Below, in pieces: positions 1,291 to 55,804 of a stretch of 64,000 nucleotides of DNA. The first letter of the stretch is position 1. Every line of letters starts with the position of its first letter. Source of the stretch: Octopus bimaculoides (taxonomy: Eukaryota); contig NC_069006.1 in assembly GCF_001194135.2 (NCBI RefSeq), positions 25,979,054 to 26,043,053 on the forward strand, in the 5' to 3' direction. Made by a program: the position numbers and the translations under genes. The notes beneath the pieces are model-generated. The model was not told the origin of the DNA. It did not search any database and saw nothing but the letters and a program-made list of their open reading frames with translations.

Positions 1291-1339
1291 TCCTGTCTGT
1301 CTTTTTGTTTTTTTTGTTTGTTCTTTTATTCAGGTAATG
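1291..1339 (+). other. Candidate recursive splice site RS1 (CAG|GTAATG at 1333/1334)
   Basis: 40-nt U-rich tract 1291-1330, no AG between 1274 and 1330, CAG 1331-1333 followed immediately by GTAATGT. Confidence 0.4.
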
Positions 1340-1849
1340 TATCTAAAACAGCTTTTATCAATGTGTCCTCTTTTTGTTTTTGTTTTGTTCTGTTCTAACA
1401 ACATTAGAGTGTGATTTGAGGCAAATTTGGTTGCTATTTCTAGCAAGTAGAACGTCTGTGTGGAGGCTGCTGTGTTTTCTGGATCAGGTGATGTAGGATA
1501 GAGTGGTGGGGGGGGTGATAGACTGAGTAGAAGGACAGGGTAGGGTGGGGACAGGTTGGCAGGGTGGGTGTCGGGTGGGTGTCCGGTGGAGAGATATATC
1601 TGCATTTTATGGAGACATTTGATATCCAGTTAGAGCTATTCAGGGTGGAGGTGCAGTAATGTAACGTCCATCCTATTGCTGACTTACGATCAAAGGCATT
1701 CCAACTATGACCATACCATGGAGTGGGGTGGGTCATGTTTATACAGAGGGTATCTTGGACTATTTTAGCCAATGAGTTCCTTTTTGTAAAGGAACATTAT
1801 TTAGCAGTTACTTCTAACAGAATGGCTGACTTATTTTGTTTTCCCCATA

Positions 1850-2040
1850 TTCCCTCGTGTAGGTTGAACTATGTAAAATGTCAGAGAAAGAAACCTGGCT
1901 GTTTCTTGCAATACAGACCAATGCATCGAATGAAAAAGGTTTTTCAGGGTCTCCTTAAAATACTATTGTGGATCCCCAGTTTACTATTTTGTTGCATGGA
2001 CCCCCTAACATCTTATATTGGCCCCAGTAGAGAAACACTG
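1850..2040 (-). mobile_element. hAT/Charlie-like MITE end, nested in a mariner remnant
   Basis: Minus strand starts CAGTGTTTCTCTACTGGGG at 2040, like Charlie-type CAGTG(T/G)TTCTCAAC TIRs, exactly where the mariner reading frame stops; second TIR not seen, lower boundary approximate. Confidence 0.4.
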
Positions 2041-2042
2041 CG

Positions 2043-2336
2043 ATACAACATCAGTTTGTCACCTGATATGACCATTTCCAAAAAGTCTTGGTCTTCCTTC
2101 ACACAATCAGGAAGATCCTCCATGGCTGAAACCTGATTTTCTTTTTTGAGACGGCCACACTCGACACACTCTACTTCCAAGCACTACTATAAACAGTAGA
2201 AAGGGGCAAGAACATTGTAACTTAGTGAGCACATGTGACAGGGTTCACGGTCATTGTGAGCCAAGCAGCTTCACTCTGCAAACTTTAGCTCCATTACAAT
2301 AGCAACATTCTTGATACCGTTTCATCAGACCTCGTA
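2043..2336 (-). mobile_element. Internally deleted Tc1/mariner element (TIR plus transposase remnant)
   Basis: TA-CGAGGTCTGATGAAA mariner-type end at 2336-2320; 2123-2043 translates MEDLPDCVKEDQDFLEMVISGDKLMLY, matching the mariner motif D-P-D-F-L-x-x-I-(I/V)-T-G-D-E-T-W around the first catalytic Asp. Confidence 0.7.
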
Positions 2337-2749
2337 TATAGTCTCTTTAGAAGAACCGAATGTCAGCACCATGACATACCGAACAGTCAATCTGAATCAA
2401 TGCCGTACCAGATCATTATTTTTTCCACGTTGACAAAGTCTCATACTGCACTCTGATTCTCATATGTTCTTACCTGACCCTTGTCTTAAATCCATCATCC
2501 AATTTACATTAATATCATTAATAACCTTTAATCTGTATTTGATCGACTCACACAGAATTGGATGGAAATGAATCAATAACACACACAAAAAAAACAAATC
2601 AACATCAGTGACCCCCACCCCCACCCCCTTTAGAAAACACTGCTTTTCCATTACAGAGATCAATCAGATTTAGACATATTATGTATCCTATGGTATTTTT
2701 GTATATCATATACTTATTATATACTTATTATATATTTTATCAATATTTA

Positions 2750-2805
2750 GCAGAAGCAACAGAGTGACTCAGGAGCCGAGAGTTTCGTGTGTTAGCACTT
2801 TGCAA
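2750..2805 (-). mobile_element. Penelope-like terminal fragment with the 3' half of a hammerhead-like motif
   Basis: Minus strand GTG-CTAACA-CAC GAAA CTC-TCGGCTCCT-GAG TC (stem II, GAAA, stem III, GUC); upstream core degenerate (TTGCAAA); lies among AT-rich microsatellites. Confidence 0.35.
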
Positions 2806-2832
2806 TAGCATTTATATACACATCAGTTTGGA

Positions 2833-2894
<62 letters not shown>

Positions 2895-2941
2895 AATATG
2901 TATTTATAAATATATGTATATATATGACATGTATGTGTATG

Positions 2942-2976
<35 letters not shown>

Positions 2977-3084
2977 ATAGCGATATGTAAGATATATATA
3001 TATAGATCTTACATGTCAGCTATATGTATTATATACATGTATTATATTAAAGATATCATATATATACATATTATATATGTTGAC

Positions 3085-3115
<31 letters not shown>

Positions 3116-3564
3116 TATTGCTACTCCTGGTGTAATCTCTTGTAAAATATCAATTGCAAATATCTAAATCCAACTTGGAATACATTTCCACGATGTTCAA
3201 GCTTCAGTCTGTCGGTTTTTTATTAAGATTCAATGAATCTTAATGGCATTTTAGGATTTGAGGATTTTTGTGTTTTGCTATTTTTGTTTTATTTTTCTGC
3301 TCATTGGCCCCCGAAAGGAACAAAATCAATTTTCTGCCACTCAGCTGTTTTTGAAGAAAACCAATTAGGGATTAATAAAGAAGGATATTGTCTGAGACTG
3401 TTGGTAAATAACTGCATCTGTTGGAATTGAACTGGCCTGTGGAGATATGTGTGTGTGTGTATACAAACACTCTTACATACATACATGTGTGGGAATATAT
3501 ACACACACACACACACATATATATCCTTATCTATATACGGATATATATGTGTGTATTCATTTCC

Positions 3565-3603
<39 letters not shown>

Positions 3604-53033: not shown

Positions 53034-53065
<32 letters not shown>

Positions 53066-53724
53066 ATGACAGAGAGAACGTAGTAAATGAATACAGAGGC
53101 AGCCATGTATGAATGAAGGCAGCTTGTTTCCTGTCCAGCAGCAAATATTAAAACCTCTCCACGTCTGGACTGTATTTAAGTTACGACAATAGAAAATCCA
53201 TGTTGAACAAGAGCATAACCAACAAGCTCCCCCACATTTCCATTCTGTTACCTAACGAGAAGAAATGGTTGAGTCAATATTAACAAACAGTTAATTAATG
53301 ACTTGAAACGAGGACAAATCTTTCTTTACACATTTTAGTTAATACTAGAATGTATTTTATACAGTGTTAACTATTAAAGCAGCCATCAATATCACGAACA
53401 GCTAACGTTGCCACGTAACTCTGTGCGGACATCTGTGTGTGTGTGTGTGTGTGTGGTTGATTTTGTCTTTGCACAGAACCAGCAGCTTGCCTCCAGGATA
53501 CGACATATTGTATAAAACTGGTCGAGTGTACTTAACACCCAAGCAATTTGTTAAAAATAATAAAATTTCAGCAAACTAAACAAATTATATTTTTGCTTTG
53601 TCAGCCTTGATTAATAAACGAAAAAAGAAAAAGAAAGAAAAAACAAACGTAAAAAAAGCCGTCGACACGTTGTGTCAATAATTAGTGAAATGCGAAAATA
53701 GACATTATAACGAGCAAGTGGGAT

Positions 53725-53820
53725 GCAGGCAGTGACTATGTGATTAACAAGTTTACTTTGTAAGTAGGTGGTTTTCGGTTCAATCCCACTCCATGATAGT
53801 GTCTTCTGTCATAGTCTTAT
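53725..53820 (+). mobile_element. SINE family A head, highly diverged
   Basis: GCAGGCAGTGACTATGTGATTAACAAGTTTAC..GGTTCAATCCCAC..GTGTCTTCTGTCATAGTC. Confidence 0.5.
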
Positions 53821-54035
53821 GGTAATGGAAAGCGTTGTGAGTGGGTGACATCCTGCCTGAGGGCCTGGGTAGGCTGCCACAGTTGGTCTTGAGTAGTAGA
53901 CTCAATCCATTACCCTATCTAACACTGCCATCCCCATCATCATCACCATCACCACCACCATCAACATATCATCATCATCATCATCATCATCATCAACTTC
54001 ATCACCACCGTCATCATCACCACCACCATTGTAAG

Positions 54036-54255
54036 TACAAGGAGGTTCCTGGCTTTAAGGGTATCACGAAAAGCCTGGTTGGAGGCCCAACCTTCCGAGT
54101 TCTTTTACAGGGCTTAGAAAAACTGAAGGACCCCTGCAATAAGTGTGTGAATCTGAGAGGAGGGGAATATTTTGAATGAAATCATAATTAACTGATCCTC
54201 ATCCTGTATTTTCTTTTATCCAAAGCCTGGAACTTTTCAGCCCCCCCCCCTCATA
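54036..54255. mobile_element. Mariner-derived MITE
   Basis: TA at both ends; left end GTTCCTGGCTTT (internal deletion) complementary to right end AAAGCCTGGAACTTTTCAGC(C)nTCATA; same TIR family as 22074. Confidence 0.75.
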
Positions 54256-54634
54256 CATACCTGGCATTTTATCAATCTCTGCTTGATGAAAGGTAAAGTC
54301 AACTGTTGTCACATTTAGATGTTGACCACCAAAACTAAATTCTACCAACTCATAATATTTCCTTGCTTCTGCAAATTCTTTAACTCTTTTGATATCAACC
54401 TACCTTATACAGTTTCTGGTTTTATCAAAGAAATGCTGGTAGAGCTAGAATTTGTGCTGCCTAAAATGGTCCTAGAATTTGGTTGCCCTTCCCCATGAAA
54501 AATATCTCATAATGCATACAATTACCACCCAAGGTGAACTACACTACTTTATTCCACTTCACCCTTCTTAGCTATGCTATTGGATATGAAACCTCCTTGT
54601 TTTAAAATTATTATCATTCTTCTTCTTCTTCTTC

Positions 54635-54678
<44 letters not shown>

Positions 54679-54812
54679 ATATATATGTATATATATATAC
54701 TCTTGACTGGTGTGTGTAAAACTTACCTTGTGAAAATATACATTAATATATTTTCAGTAAAACTATTTATATGAAAACATTTGTGAAAATATATTTGGCT
54801 ATTTTTTTACTC

Positions 54813-54856
<44 letters not shown>

Positions 54857-54860
54857 AAAC

Positions 54861-54989
54861 CGAAGGGCCACTGCAATAAGTGTGTGAATCTGAGAGGAGG
54901 GGAATATGTTTAATGAAATCATAATTAACTGATCCTCATCCTGTATTTTCTTTTACCTAAAGCCAGGAACTTTTCAGCAATCCCTCATA
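54861..54989. mobile_element. Duplicate of the 3' half of the 54036-54255 MITE
   Basis: Near-identical CTGCAATAAGTGTGTGAATCTGAGAGGAGGGGAATAT..GATCCTCATCCTGTATTTTCTTTTA; same downstream flank ATACCTGGCAT. Confidence 0.85.
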
Positions 54990-55462
54990 CCTGGCATATG
55001 GTCGTGGCAGATGAAGAGATATCTCACAGTGTTAGGGACTAACTGGGACCCTGCTGGACAGGCCAACTGGGAGGAGCCAGGAATATCTCAAGACATGGTG
55101 AATGCAGCAACTCACTGCAACAGCACATTCCCCCACATCTGACCTCATCTGACAATAACCATCCCCATTGTTATCAGGGTGGGGTTATGAAAAACACACA
55201 GGTGTGACATGAAGAAGAATAAATAAATCAAAGTCGATTCAAACTGTTCAATAAGTAATCTTACCTGTGGCACATATTATATTGATCTTATAGGTTGGGT
55301 ACAGGTGGATAGGCGTCTATTATTGATATAGCTGTTGGTTCACGATGGAGGGGGGGCTGCGTTAGCAAAATATTTGACTGACATAAATATTCACACAAAT
55401 GTTTGTTTTAATTATTTGTTTTACATTTTGTCTTGTTTTGTTTTGTTTCGTTAATCAATCAG

Positions 55463-55502
55463 CCTAACAATTACTTTTCCTTGTTTACTTTTTCAGGTGA
55501 GT
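55463..55502 (+). other. Candidate recursive splice site RS4 (CAG|GTGAGT at 55496/55497)
   Basis: Canonical branch motif CTAAC (55464-55468), pyrimidine tract TTACTTTTCCTTGTTTACTTTTT, CAG, then consensus GTGAGT; second donor AAG|GTATGT at 55617/55618. Confidence 0.55.
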
Positions 55503-55804
55503 CTTTTTTCTTTAATCAATTAACATTTGTTCTGCTGATTACAATTGAAAATCCTGCAACAGCTTGAGGGAGGAGGGTTTTTAAGTGGTCCTCACCTCAC
55601 ACAGCACGTCGTTAAAGGTATGTCAACTAAAACAAAGCTAAAAAAAAAAAATAACAATAAAAAAACAAGCAAAAAAGACAATGGGATACTTTTTACTTTT
55701 CTGTTGTTTCAAAATTAATTGTATCAGTTAATATATTGATCTCTGTGTATCAGACTGCTAAGTTAATATAAAAGTGTATGATGTAAACAGCAACGTTTTG
55801 ATAT

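What the first reader, a model, noticed from the sequence alone, without database searches (positions are those of the whole stretch)
1291..55623. Series of + strand zero-length-exon (YAG|GT) sites: candidate recursive splicing of giant cephalopod introns
Seen: four places where a 3' splice site (pyrimidine tract, AG-free zone, YAG) is fused to a good 5' splice site: 1333 CAG|GTAATG, 17453 CAG|GTATGT, 22811 TAG|GTAAGT, 55496 CAG|GTGAGT. All are on +, outside recognisable repeats, 5-33 kb apart, and interleaved with + strand candidate exons. A manual, non-exhaustive scan of the minus strand found donor-like motifs but none behind a comparable pyrimidine tract. Established: ratchet points with this AG|GT architecture subdivide long introns in Drosophila (e.g. 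Ubx), and RS-exons occur in long vertebrate neuronal genes. Inference: the same mechanism works in this long-intron locus; I am not aware of recursive splicing being described in cephalopods.
Basis: partly seen in the sequence, partly recalled or inferred. Interest (0 to 1): 0.8.

Follow-up and report, generated by a model that had tools for sequence, protein, structure and literature searches.

The report
Two candidate recursive splice sites
Two of the four flagged spots are textbook acceptor-fused-to-donor splice motifs on the same strand of a gene-poor stretch, so stepwise ("recursive") removal of a giant intron is plausible. No transcript, gene or cross-species evidence could be obtained, and the other two spots are what chance gives.

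Summary
Only two are strong: 22811 (T-rich tract, TAG|GTAAGT) and 55496 (CTAAC branch point, tract, CAG|GTGAGT). The classical ratchet-point consensus (Y)16NYAG|GTRAGT with up to 2 mismatches hits just these two, both on +, against 0.06 expected on both strands together. Permutation and Markov nulls give P of about 0.003 or less. Sites 1333 (GTAATG donor) and 17453 (weak tract, donor at the edge of a low-complexity repeat) belong to a class expected 1-2 times per strand by chance.

Each strong site also has a weaker donor 48-121 nt downstream, which is the "cryptic RS-exon" layout described in Drosophila. The two sites are not copies of one repeat.

The gene context is unproven. No ORF on either strand matches Pfam or 5.8 billion protein clusters. 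There are no Rfam or tRNA hits. No cephalopod DNA or RNA-seq was reachable, so neither the organism nor + strand transcription could be checked. Fifteen assembly gaps make the spacing nominal, but none touches a site.

Verdict: a reasonable but untested prediction of two recursive splice sites, not a series of four. If true it is a new member of a known kind.

The parts
22785..22789 (+). Branch-point-like TTGAT (A at 22788, 23 nt before the AG); a second candidate is TTTAC at 22773-22777
   Evidence: yUnAy scan. It lies inside a 103-nt AG-free zone, the 98.6th percentile of all AG-to-AG distances.
22792..22811 (+). Polypyrimidine tract plus TAG, the 3' splice site half of strong site A
   Evidence: 19 of 20 upstream bases are pyrimidines. 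It has the highest acceptor score (9.7) of all 336 AG|GT sites.
22812..22817 (+). GTAAGT, a perfect 5' splice site hexamer abutting the AG (strong site A)
22812..22883 (+). Candidate cryptic RS-exon of site A, with weaker donors AAG|GTGTGG after 22859 (48 nt) and GAG|GTAAAA after 22883 (72 nt)
   Evidence: donor scores 4.4 and 2.3 against 6.6 for the fused donor. Frame 0 is open, but there is no homologue.
55464..55468 (+). Branch-point consensus CTAAC (A at 55467, 29 nt before the AG), immediately after the last upstream AG
55469..55496 (+). Polypyrimidine tract plus CAG, the 3' splice site half of strong site B
   Evidence: 18 of 20 upstream bases are pyrimidines; acceptor score 8.6.
55497..55502 (+). 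GTGAGT, the 5' splice site hexamer abutting the AG (strong site B)
55497..55617 (+). Candidate cryptic RS-exon of site B (121 nt), ending at AAG|GTATGT
   Evidence: downstream donor 5.3 against 8.7 for the fused donor. A donor this good occurs about once per 4.5 kb on +. Stop codons in all three frames, and the length is not a multiple of 3.
1291..1339 (+). Weak site CAG|GTAATG: chance-level, not part of the feature
   Evidence: Donor score 0.0 with no G at +5. The tract is a (TTTTTGTTT)2 low-complexity run. The class is expected 1-2 times per strand.
17422..17459 (+). Weak site CAG|GTATGT: chance-level, not part of the feature
   Evidence: Acceptor score 2.9 with a purine-interrupted tract. 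The donor abuts a (TGCGTGCA)n array.

Best explanation
Sites 22811 and 55496 are functional composite splice sites (ratchet points) on a + strand primary transcript whose exons lie outside this window.

Inferred mechanism:
1. U2AF and U2 recognise the strong tract, branch point and YAG. Exon definition helps, through U1 binding at the weaker donor 48-121 nt downstream.
2. The upstream exon, or a previous ratchet point, is ligated to the G at 22812 or 55497.
3. That ligation rebuilds a strong 5' splice site (exon|GTAAGT or exon|GTGAGT).
4. The rebuilt site out-competes the downstream donor, so the short cryptic exon is removed together with the next intron segment.

The result is that a very long intron is excised in pieces, nominally about 33 kb between the two sites, leaving no trace in the mRNA.

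What is shown: the motif anatomy, its statistical excess, the strand bias, the downstream donors and the absence of coding sequence. What is inferred: transcription, strand, intron membership and actual use. Sites 1333 and 17453 are not part of this.
For: - The consensus (Y)16NYAG|GTRAGT with <=2 mismatches hits only these two sites, both on +, against 0.06 expected.
- Permutation gives P = 0.0026. Markov nulls give 0-0.007 per window.
- Of 15 AG|GTRAG sites, only these two have >=18/20 upstream pyrimidines, a property of 0.34% of all AGs.
- The implied density is about 3.4 per 100 kb on + against 0 on -. Published background is about 0.1 per 100 kb, against 0.5-2.2 in large introns of sea urchin and insects (PMC2773006).
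- Branch-point-like motifs lie at -23 and -29, and the AG-free zones are 103 and 32 nt.
- Each site has a weaker downstream donor at +48/+72 or +121, each with about 3% chance. This matches the cryptic RS-exon model, in which the exon is out of frame and the ratchet-point donor is the stronger one (PMC8605326). It also matches the downstream 5'ss enrichment and very strong 3'ss reported for fly recursive sites (PMC6110457).
- The two sites share no extended similarity, so they are not copies of one element.
- There is no coding exon anywhere in the 64 kb, as expected inside a giant intron.
Against: - There is no evidence of any transcript, host gene or strand of transcription. The window could be intergenic.
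- Conservation could not be tested.
- Score thresholds were set after seeing the sites, and the first-stage reader selected this window, so the true look-elsewhere-corrected P is weaker than 0.002.
- Only n = 2.
- The total number of YAGGTRAGT 9-mers (4) is not above shuffle expectation (2.3).
- The weight matrices are generic, not species-specific.
- Nine assembly gaps lie between the two sites, so the same-strand, same-locus relation depends on scaffold correctness.
- Splice-like motifs also occur on the minus strand beside site B.
Confidence: 0.45

Rival explanations
1. Chance. Two good acceptor-like tracts happen to be followed by GTRAGT in non-functional DNA (intergenic or antisense), and the first-stage reader picked the window because of them.
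For: - The per-window chance is about 0.002-0.007 (background rate in PMC2773006). That is not negligible if hundreds of windows were read.
- The genome is T-rich with many T-rich low-complexity runs, for example (TTTTG)n near 1333 and 55426.
- No transcript or gene was found.
Against: - Stricter scoring gives a much lower expectation (0.003 per strand; 0/600 order-3 simulations).
- Several independent extra features were not used to find the sites: the same strand, downstream weaker donors at about 3% each, a CTAAC branch point placed exactly after the last AG, and a 103-nt AG-free zone.
Confidence: 0.27
2. The sites are ordinary (non-recursive) 3' splice sites of short non-coding, UTR or poison cassette exons (22812-22859/22883 and 55497-55617) of a + strand mRNA or lncRNA. 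These exons would be spliced with their downstream donors. The GTRAGT at the exon start would be incidental, or would act as a regulatory decoy or 'zero-length exon' rather than subdividing the intron.
For: - Both sites have a usable downstream donor.
- The 72-nt version at site A keeps frame 0 open.
- A zero-length exon with a non-recursive role was proposed for the rat tropomyosin pseudo-exon, as cited in PMC2773006.
- Expressed RS-exons exist in flies and dominate in vertebrates (PMC8605326).
Against: - An exon starting with a near-perfect 5'ss hexamer by accident is as improbable as the chance rival, and here it would have to happen twice.
- The fused donors score higher than the downstream ones, which in flies predicts skipping.
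- The 121-nt exon has stops in all frames.
- No homologue exists for the 22812 ORF.
Confidence: 0.18
3. The motifs belong to something unrelated to + strand splicing. Examples are parts of dispersed elements that are single-copy in this window but repeated genome-wide, or by-products of a minus-strand gene whose splice-like signals lie at 55596-55638.
For: - A minus-strand candidate micro-exon has a ~40-nt T tract, two AGs and a GAG|GTGAGG donor 100 nt from site B.
- The window is full of interspersed repeats in both orientations.
- The genome-wide copy number of the flanks could not be checked.
Against: - Neither site lies in a window-internal repeat, and the two do not resemble each other.
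- The minus-strand acceptor/donor pair is expected about 0.6 times by chance. This is my estimate from the counts.
- A minus-strand exon would not explain a + strand tract-YAG|GTRAGT.
Confidence: 0.1

Closest known systems
Drosophila intronic ratchet points / zero-nucleotide recursive splice sites (Hatton 1998; Burnette 2005; Duff 2015; Pai 2018 PMC6110457; Joseph & Lai 2021 PMC8605326)
   Same: Both have the juxtaposed (Y)nNYAG|GTRAGT core. The 3'ss half is very strong. A weaker donor lies tens of nucleotides downstream and defines a short cryptic exon that is out of frame or stop-containing. The location is a long stretch without coding exons, and spacing is tens of kb.
   Different: There is no evidence here of transcription, intron membership, splicing intermediates or conservation. 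The cryptic exons (48-121 nt) are longer than the ~50 nt typical in flies. The taxon is presumed to be a cephalopod but is unverified.
Computationally predicted RP-site enrichment in large introns of non-drosophilid invertebrates (Shepard et al. 2009, PMC2773006: mosquito, bee, beetle, sea urchin)
   Same: The inference is of the same kind (motif score plus sense/antisense contrast), and the density is similar: about 3 per 100 kb here against 0.5-2.2 there, over a ~0.1 background.
   Different: That study used hundreds of annotated introns longer than 50 kb. This is one unannotated 64-kb window with n = 2, and molluscs were not among the species analysed.
Vertebrate RS-exons in long neuronal genes (Sibley 2015; as summarised in PMC8605326)
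   Same: A 3'ss is followed by a reconstituted 5'ss plus a competing downstream 5'ss. The exon carries premature stops (55497-55617).
   Different: Vertebrate RS-exons are mostly annotated or expressed exons, and fully suppressed sites are few (nine were noted). Inclusion behaviour cannot be assessed here.
Zero-length exon of the rat alpha-tropomyosin pseudo-exon (Grellscheid & Smith 2006, cited in PMC2773006)
   Same: A 5'ss directly follows a pseudo-exon 3'ss.
   Different: It was proposed to regulate pseudo-exon use and NMD, not to subdivide a long intron, and it is a single case in a short intron context.

Membership tests
Intronic ratchet point (recursive splice site, Drosophila type) | Juxtaposed strong 3'ss and 5'ss around an invariant AG|GT, consensus (Y)nNYAG|GTRAGT | tested here: met
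   Met for 22811 and 55496. Not met for 1333 (donor GTAATG, score 0) or 17453 (acceptor score 2.9).
Intronic ratchet point (recursive splice site, Drosophila type) | Lies on the sense strand inside a long (>10-20 kb) intron of a transcribed gene | not testable with these tools
   No annotation or RNA data was reachable. The only indirect evidence is that there is no coding exon, Pfam domain or protein homologue on either strand in 64 kb.
Intronic ratchet point (recursive splice site, Drosophila type) | Excess over the complementary strand and over random expectation | tested here: inconclusive
   2 on + against 0 on -, with 0.06 expected for both strands and permutation P = 0.0026. However, n = 2, the thresholds are post hoc, and only one window was examined.
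Intronic ratchet point (recursive splice site, Drosophila type) | Short cryptic RS-exon: a downstream 5'ss weaker than the ratchet-point 5'ss, with exon content usually out of frame | tested here: met
   Site 22811 has donors at +48 (4.4) and +72 (2.3) against 6.6. Site 55496 has a donor at +121 (5.3) against 8.7, with stops in all frames. Criteria are from PMC8605326 and PMC6110457.
Intronic ratchet point (recursive splice site, Drosophila type) | Strong conservation of the SA|SD core in related species, with poorly conserved flanks | not testable with these tools
   No cephalopod genomes are in the collections. Exact-match scans of metagenome contigs with both cores found nothing, and ORF look-ups found nothing.
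Intronic ratchet point (recursive splice site, Drosophila type) | Splicing intermediates: exon-to-RP junction reads, segment lariats, saw-tooth nascent RNA profile | not testable with these tools
   No RNA-seq access.
Conventional coding cassette exon | Open reading frame preserved between acceptor and donor, with a protein homologue or domain | tested here: not met
   55497-55617 has stops in all frames. 22812-22883 is open in one frame but has no homologue. No Pfam hit anywhere.
U1 snRNA gene or pseudogene on the minus strand (ACTTACCT is the reverse complement of AGGTAAGT) | Match to the U1 covariance model | tested here: not met
   Rfam scan of the whole window at gathering thresholds gave 0 families.

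The most novel reading that the evidence does not exclude
Cephalopod giant introns are routinely subdivided by Drosophila-type zero-length ratchet points at fly-like density. These two sites would be the first lophotrochozoan examples. That would imply that recursive splicing through cryptic RS-exons is an ancestral bilaterian solution for very long introns, not an insect speciality with a few vertebrate cases.
Probability: 0.3. Interest if true: 0.55.

Novelty: new member of a known kind. Interest (0 to 1): 0.4.

Why it matters
Octopus genomes are large and repeat-rich, and many genes have long introns. How such introns are removed accurately is not known for any mollusc.

If these sites are used, recursive splicing would extend from insects and a handful of vertebrate genes to Lophotrochozoa. 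That would support an ancient origin and give a simple sequence rule for annotating hidden splicing steps in cephalopod neuronal genes.

The mechanism itself would be the known one, and sense-strand enrichment of such motifs in other invertebrates was reported in 2009. The gain is therefore taxonomic breadth rather than a new principle. The hypothesis can be tested directly with existing public RNA-seq and genome assemblies.

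Tried and rejected
- **Coding exons and host gene.** Pfam on all non-low-complexity stop-to-stop ORFs >=45 aa of both strands, and on the low-complexity long ORFs, gave no significant family.
- **Protein homologues.** All three protein-database searches found nothing: + strand ORFs >=62 aa; then - strand ORFs plus the 12-kb Ala/Thr-rich ORFs and repeat-derived ORFs; then 28 short splice-flanked ORFs of both strands.
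- **Exact ORF look-ups.** These were meant to pull the locus or orthologous contigs. Nothing is on record.
- **Metagenome contigs.** Exact-match scans with both site cores returned nothing. No conservation test and no check of the organism was possible.
- **Splice-site-bounded exon scans.** Stringent and relaxed scans gave no convincing exon on either strand.
- **U1 snRNA or other RNA gene on the minus strand.** Rejected: Rfam 0, tRNA 0.
- **The two strong sites as copies of one repeat.** Rejected. A shared ~11-nt AT-rich word about 130 nt upstream is within chance.
- **Excess of perfect donor 9-mers as evidence of + transcription.** Rejected: 4 observed against 2.3 expected.
- **Base-composition skew as a strand indicator.** The + strand has T>A but C>G (AT skew -0.031, GC skew -0.032 after masking simple repeats). 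This is ambiguous and was not used.
- **Repeat orientation bias.** Copies occur in both orientations, so it is uninformative.
- **A mariner-like C-terminal resemblance at 53841-54179.** I recalled this from memory. Pfam did not support it and I dropped it.
- **Literature searches beyond.** These returned nothing on recursive splicing in molluscs.

Full report
**Observation.** The four quoted sequences are present exactly as described: 1333 CAG|GTAATG, 17453 CAG|GTATGT, 22811 TAG|GTAAGT and 55496 CAG|GTGAGT. The window is 38% G+C and T-rich. It contains 15 runs of N totalling 5135 bases.

I enumerated every AG|GT on both strands, 156 on + and 180 on -. Each was scored with a generic metazoan acceptor matrix (positions -20 to -3) and a donor matrix (+3 to +6). 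Only the intronic donor positions were used, because in a recursive site the exonic positions come from the upstream exon. The four sites fall into two classes:

| Site | Acceptor score | Donor score |
|---|---|---|
| 22811 | 9.7 | 4.9 |
| 55496 | 8.6 | 4.7 |
| 1333 | 7.3 | 0.0 |
| 17453 | 2.9 | 2.1 |

The first two are the best composite sites in the window by a wide margin. Site 1333 lacks a G at +5. Site 17453 has a purine-interrupted tract.

**Is it more than chance?**
- For the weak class, independence predicts 1.6-1.8 sites per strand. Markov simulations trained on the + strand predict 1.2-2.0. Two weak sites on + is therefore what chance gives.
- For the strong class, independence predicts 0.003 per strand.
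- Permuting donor scores among the 336 AG|GT sites gives P(>=1) = 0.09 and P(>=2) = 0.0026.
- Order-3 Markov simulations gave 0 strong sites in 600 windows. Order-5, which partly memorises the real sites, gave 0.0067 per window.
- A rule-based view agrees. Of 15 AG|GTRAG sites (7 on +, 8 on -), only these two have at least 18 of 20 upstream pyrimidines, a property of 0.34% of all AGs.
- The session's own pattern tool finds (Y)16NYAG|GTRAGT with up to 2 mismatches twice, both on +, against 0.06 expected for both strands in 100 dinucleotide-preserving shuffles. A laxer 8-pyrimidine pattern gives 2 against 0.22.
- The bare 9-mer YAGGTRAGT is not enriched overall: 4 against 2.3 expected, although all four are on +.
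- Published background for such 'RP-sites' is about 0.1 per 100 kb per strand in all animals examined. In large introns it is 0.5-2.2 per 100 kb for sea urchin, bee, beetle, mosquito and fly (PMC2773006). Two sites in 59 kb of one strand is fly-like.

A realistic per-window P is therefore about 0.002-0.007, not 1e-5.

**Anatomy of the two strong sites.**

Site A (22811):
- It has a 103-nt AG-free zone, the 98.6th percentile of AG-to-AG distances.
- It has yUnAy branch-point candidates TTGAT (A at -23) and TTTAC (A at -35).
- A T10-containing tract is followed by TAG|GTAAGT.

Site B (55496):
- The last upstream AG is immediately followed by CTAAC, the branch-point consensus, with its A at -29.
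- A 28-nt AG-free tract follows, then CAG|GTGAGT.

Neither site lies in a tandem repeat or in a window-internal dispersed repeat. The nearest repeat copy to site A starts about 118 nt downstream. The two sites share no extended similarity, so they are independent sequences rather than copies of one element.

Each site is followed by a weaker donor:
- Site A has AAG|GTGTGG at +48 and GAG|GTAAAA at +72.
- Site B has AAG|GTATGT at +121.
- Donors this good occur about once per 1.8 kb and once per 4.5 kb on +, so each proximity has roughly a 3% chance.
- In both cases the fused donor scores higher than the downstream one.
- The 121-nt segment has stops in all frames.

This is the 'cryptic RS-exon' layout established in Drosophila. 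There the ratchet-point donor out-competes the RS-exon donor, and the exon content is generally out of frame (PMC8605326). It also fits the reported enrichment of 5'ss motifs downstream of fly recursive sites and their unusually strong 3'ss halves (PMC6110457).

**The two weak sites.** The tract at 1333 is a (TTTTTGTTT)2 low-complexity run, with more (TTTTG)n 35 nt downstream. The donor at 17453 abuts a (TGCGTGCA)n array, and a (TC)25 microsatellite lies about 90 nt upstream. 'Outside recognisable repeats' is therefore not accurate for these two. I do not count them as part of any feature.

**Context.** I looked hard for the host gene and found none.
- Pfam on all non-low-complexity ORFs of at least 45 aa on both strands, and on the long low-complexity ORFs, returned nothing significant.
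- Three searches of the 5.8-billion-cluster protein collection returned no hit. They covered + strand ORFs >=62 aa, then - strand ORFs plus the 12-kb Ala/Thr-rich ORFs and repeat-derived ORFs, then 28 short ORFs bounded by at least minimal splice signals on either strand.
- Exon scans with splice matrices found nothing convincing on either strand.
- Rfam and tRNA scans were empty. This also excludes a minus-strand U1 gene as the source of ACTTACCT.

The window is thus non-coding throughout. That is compatible with the interior of a giant intron and equally with intergenic DNA.

The organism could not be verified, and no related genomic sequence could be fetched. Conservation, the most informative in-silico test, remains undone. 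Base skews are ambiguous (T>A but C>G on +). Dispersed repeats occur in both orientations.

**Gaps.** The program's note lists six gaps. There are twelve inside the finding's span and fifteen in the window. Most are flanked on one or both sides by (TA)n or (CA)n, as expected for unresolved microsatellites, but continuity cannot be proven. No gap lies within 1.1 kb of any site or its candidate RS-exon, so the motifs stand. Nine gaps (3560 N) lie between the two strong sites, so the 32.7-kb spacing is nominal. The same-strand relation also depends on correct scaffolding.

**Explanation and rivals.** The best-supported reading is that 22811 and 55496 are ratchet-point-type composite splice sites of an unidentified + strand transcript. 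They would work by exon-definition recognition of a short cryptic exon, ligation to the upstream exon, regeneration of a strong 5'ss and removal of the cryptic exon with the next intron segment. I give this 0.45.

- Chance (0.27) remains a serious rival because of selection effects and n = 2.
- Ordinary or regulatory short non-coding exons that use the downstream donors (0.18) share the first step with recursion. Only RNA data can separate the two.
- Unrelated origins (0.10) include a genome-wide repeat, or a minus-strand gene suggested by splice-like signals at 55596-55638.

**Comparison and novelty.** The two strong sites meet every sequence-level criterion of Drosophila intronic ratchet points that could be tested. 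The criteria that make a site 'recursive' could not be tested: intron membership, intermediates and conservation.

In the searchable library, only one paper contains both 'recursive splicing' and 'cephalopod', and each term occurs just once in it. Motif enrichment in large introns of other invertebrates has been known since 2009.

If confirmed, this is a new member of a known kind. It would be of moderate interest for its taxonomic reach and because public data can test it immediately. It is not a new mechanism.

Noticed in passing
window 55596-55682, minus strand: The reverse complement of the + strand A-run (55640-55682) is a ~40-nt T tract. It is followed by two AGs (...tttag|CTTTGTTTTAG|TTGAC...) and a GAG|GTGAGG donor. 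Together these give a splice-like 31/42-nt micro-exon candidate on the minus strand that overlaps the + strand downstream donor of site B. I estimate such a pair is expected about 0.6 times by chance in the window.
   Followed up: partly
window 10777-11336; copies at 300-619, 20466-20650, 41271-41506, 42093-42400: A dispersed repeat family whose longest copy is internally tandem (units of roughly 230 nt). Copies are 70-83% identical and occur in both orientations. No Rfam, tRNA or protein match.
   Followed up: partly
window 16366, 18628, 28883, 30139, 31797, 33890, 37517, 40009, 47621 (each ~90-170 nt): A second short interspersed repeat family (SINE-like size) present in both orientations. 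Its copies translate to the recurrent '...EDTCPRCHAVGLNPEPCGWE...' pseudo-peptide. A third family sits at 8503, 22929, 36344, 45869 and 47951, giving '...FPCWHGLD...'.
   Followed up: partly
window 11891-12383: A G+C-richer (GCN/ACN)-like tract is open for about 270-280 codons on both strands, counting across the gap at 11691-11890. It ends at a strong + strand donor, CAG|GTAAGC (12332). No Pfam domain and no homologue, so it is probably a triplet-like low-complexity tract rather than an exon.
   Followed up: yes
window 16653-16661 and 32474-32482, + strand: Two perfect CAG|GTAAGT donor 9-mers without any upstream pyrimidine tract. Together with the two strong sites, all four YAGGTRAGT matches in the window are on +, although the total (4) is not above shuffle expectation (2.3).
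   Followed up: partly
window 42506, 46316, 47886, 48725, 50383, 52819 (and 59282, 61421, 62779 outside the span): The finding's span contains six more assembly gaps than the program's note lists. Most gaps are bounded by (TA)n or (CA)n, and the gap at 52819 is bounded by a C homopolymer.
   Followed up: yes
window 41240-41270, + strand: A further AG|GT site (41264) has a high acceptor score only because its 'tract' is a (CT)n microsatellite. Its donor, GTGGTG, is poor. This is an example of how microsatellites mimic pyrimidine tracts in this sequence.
   Followed up: yes
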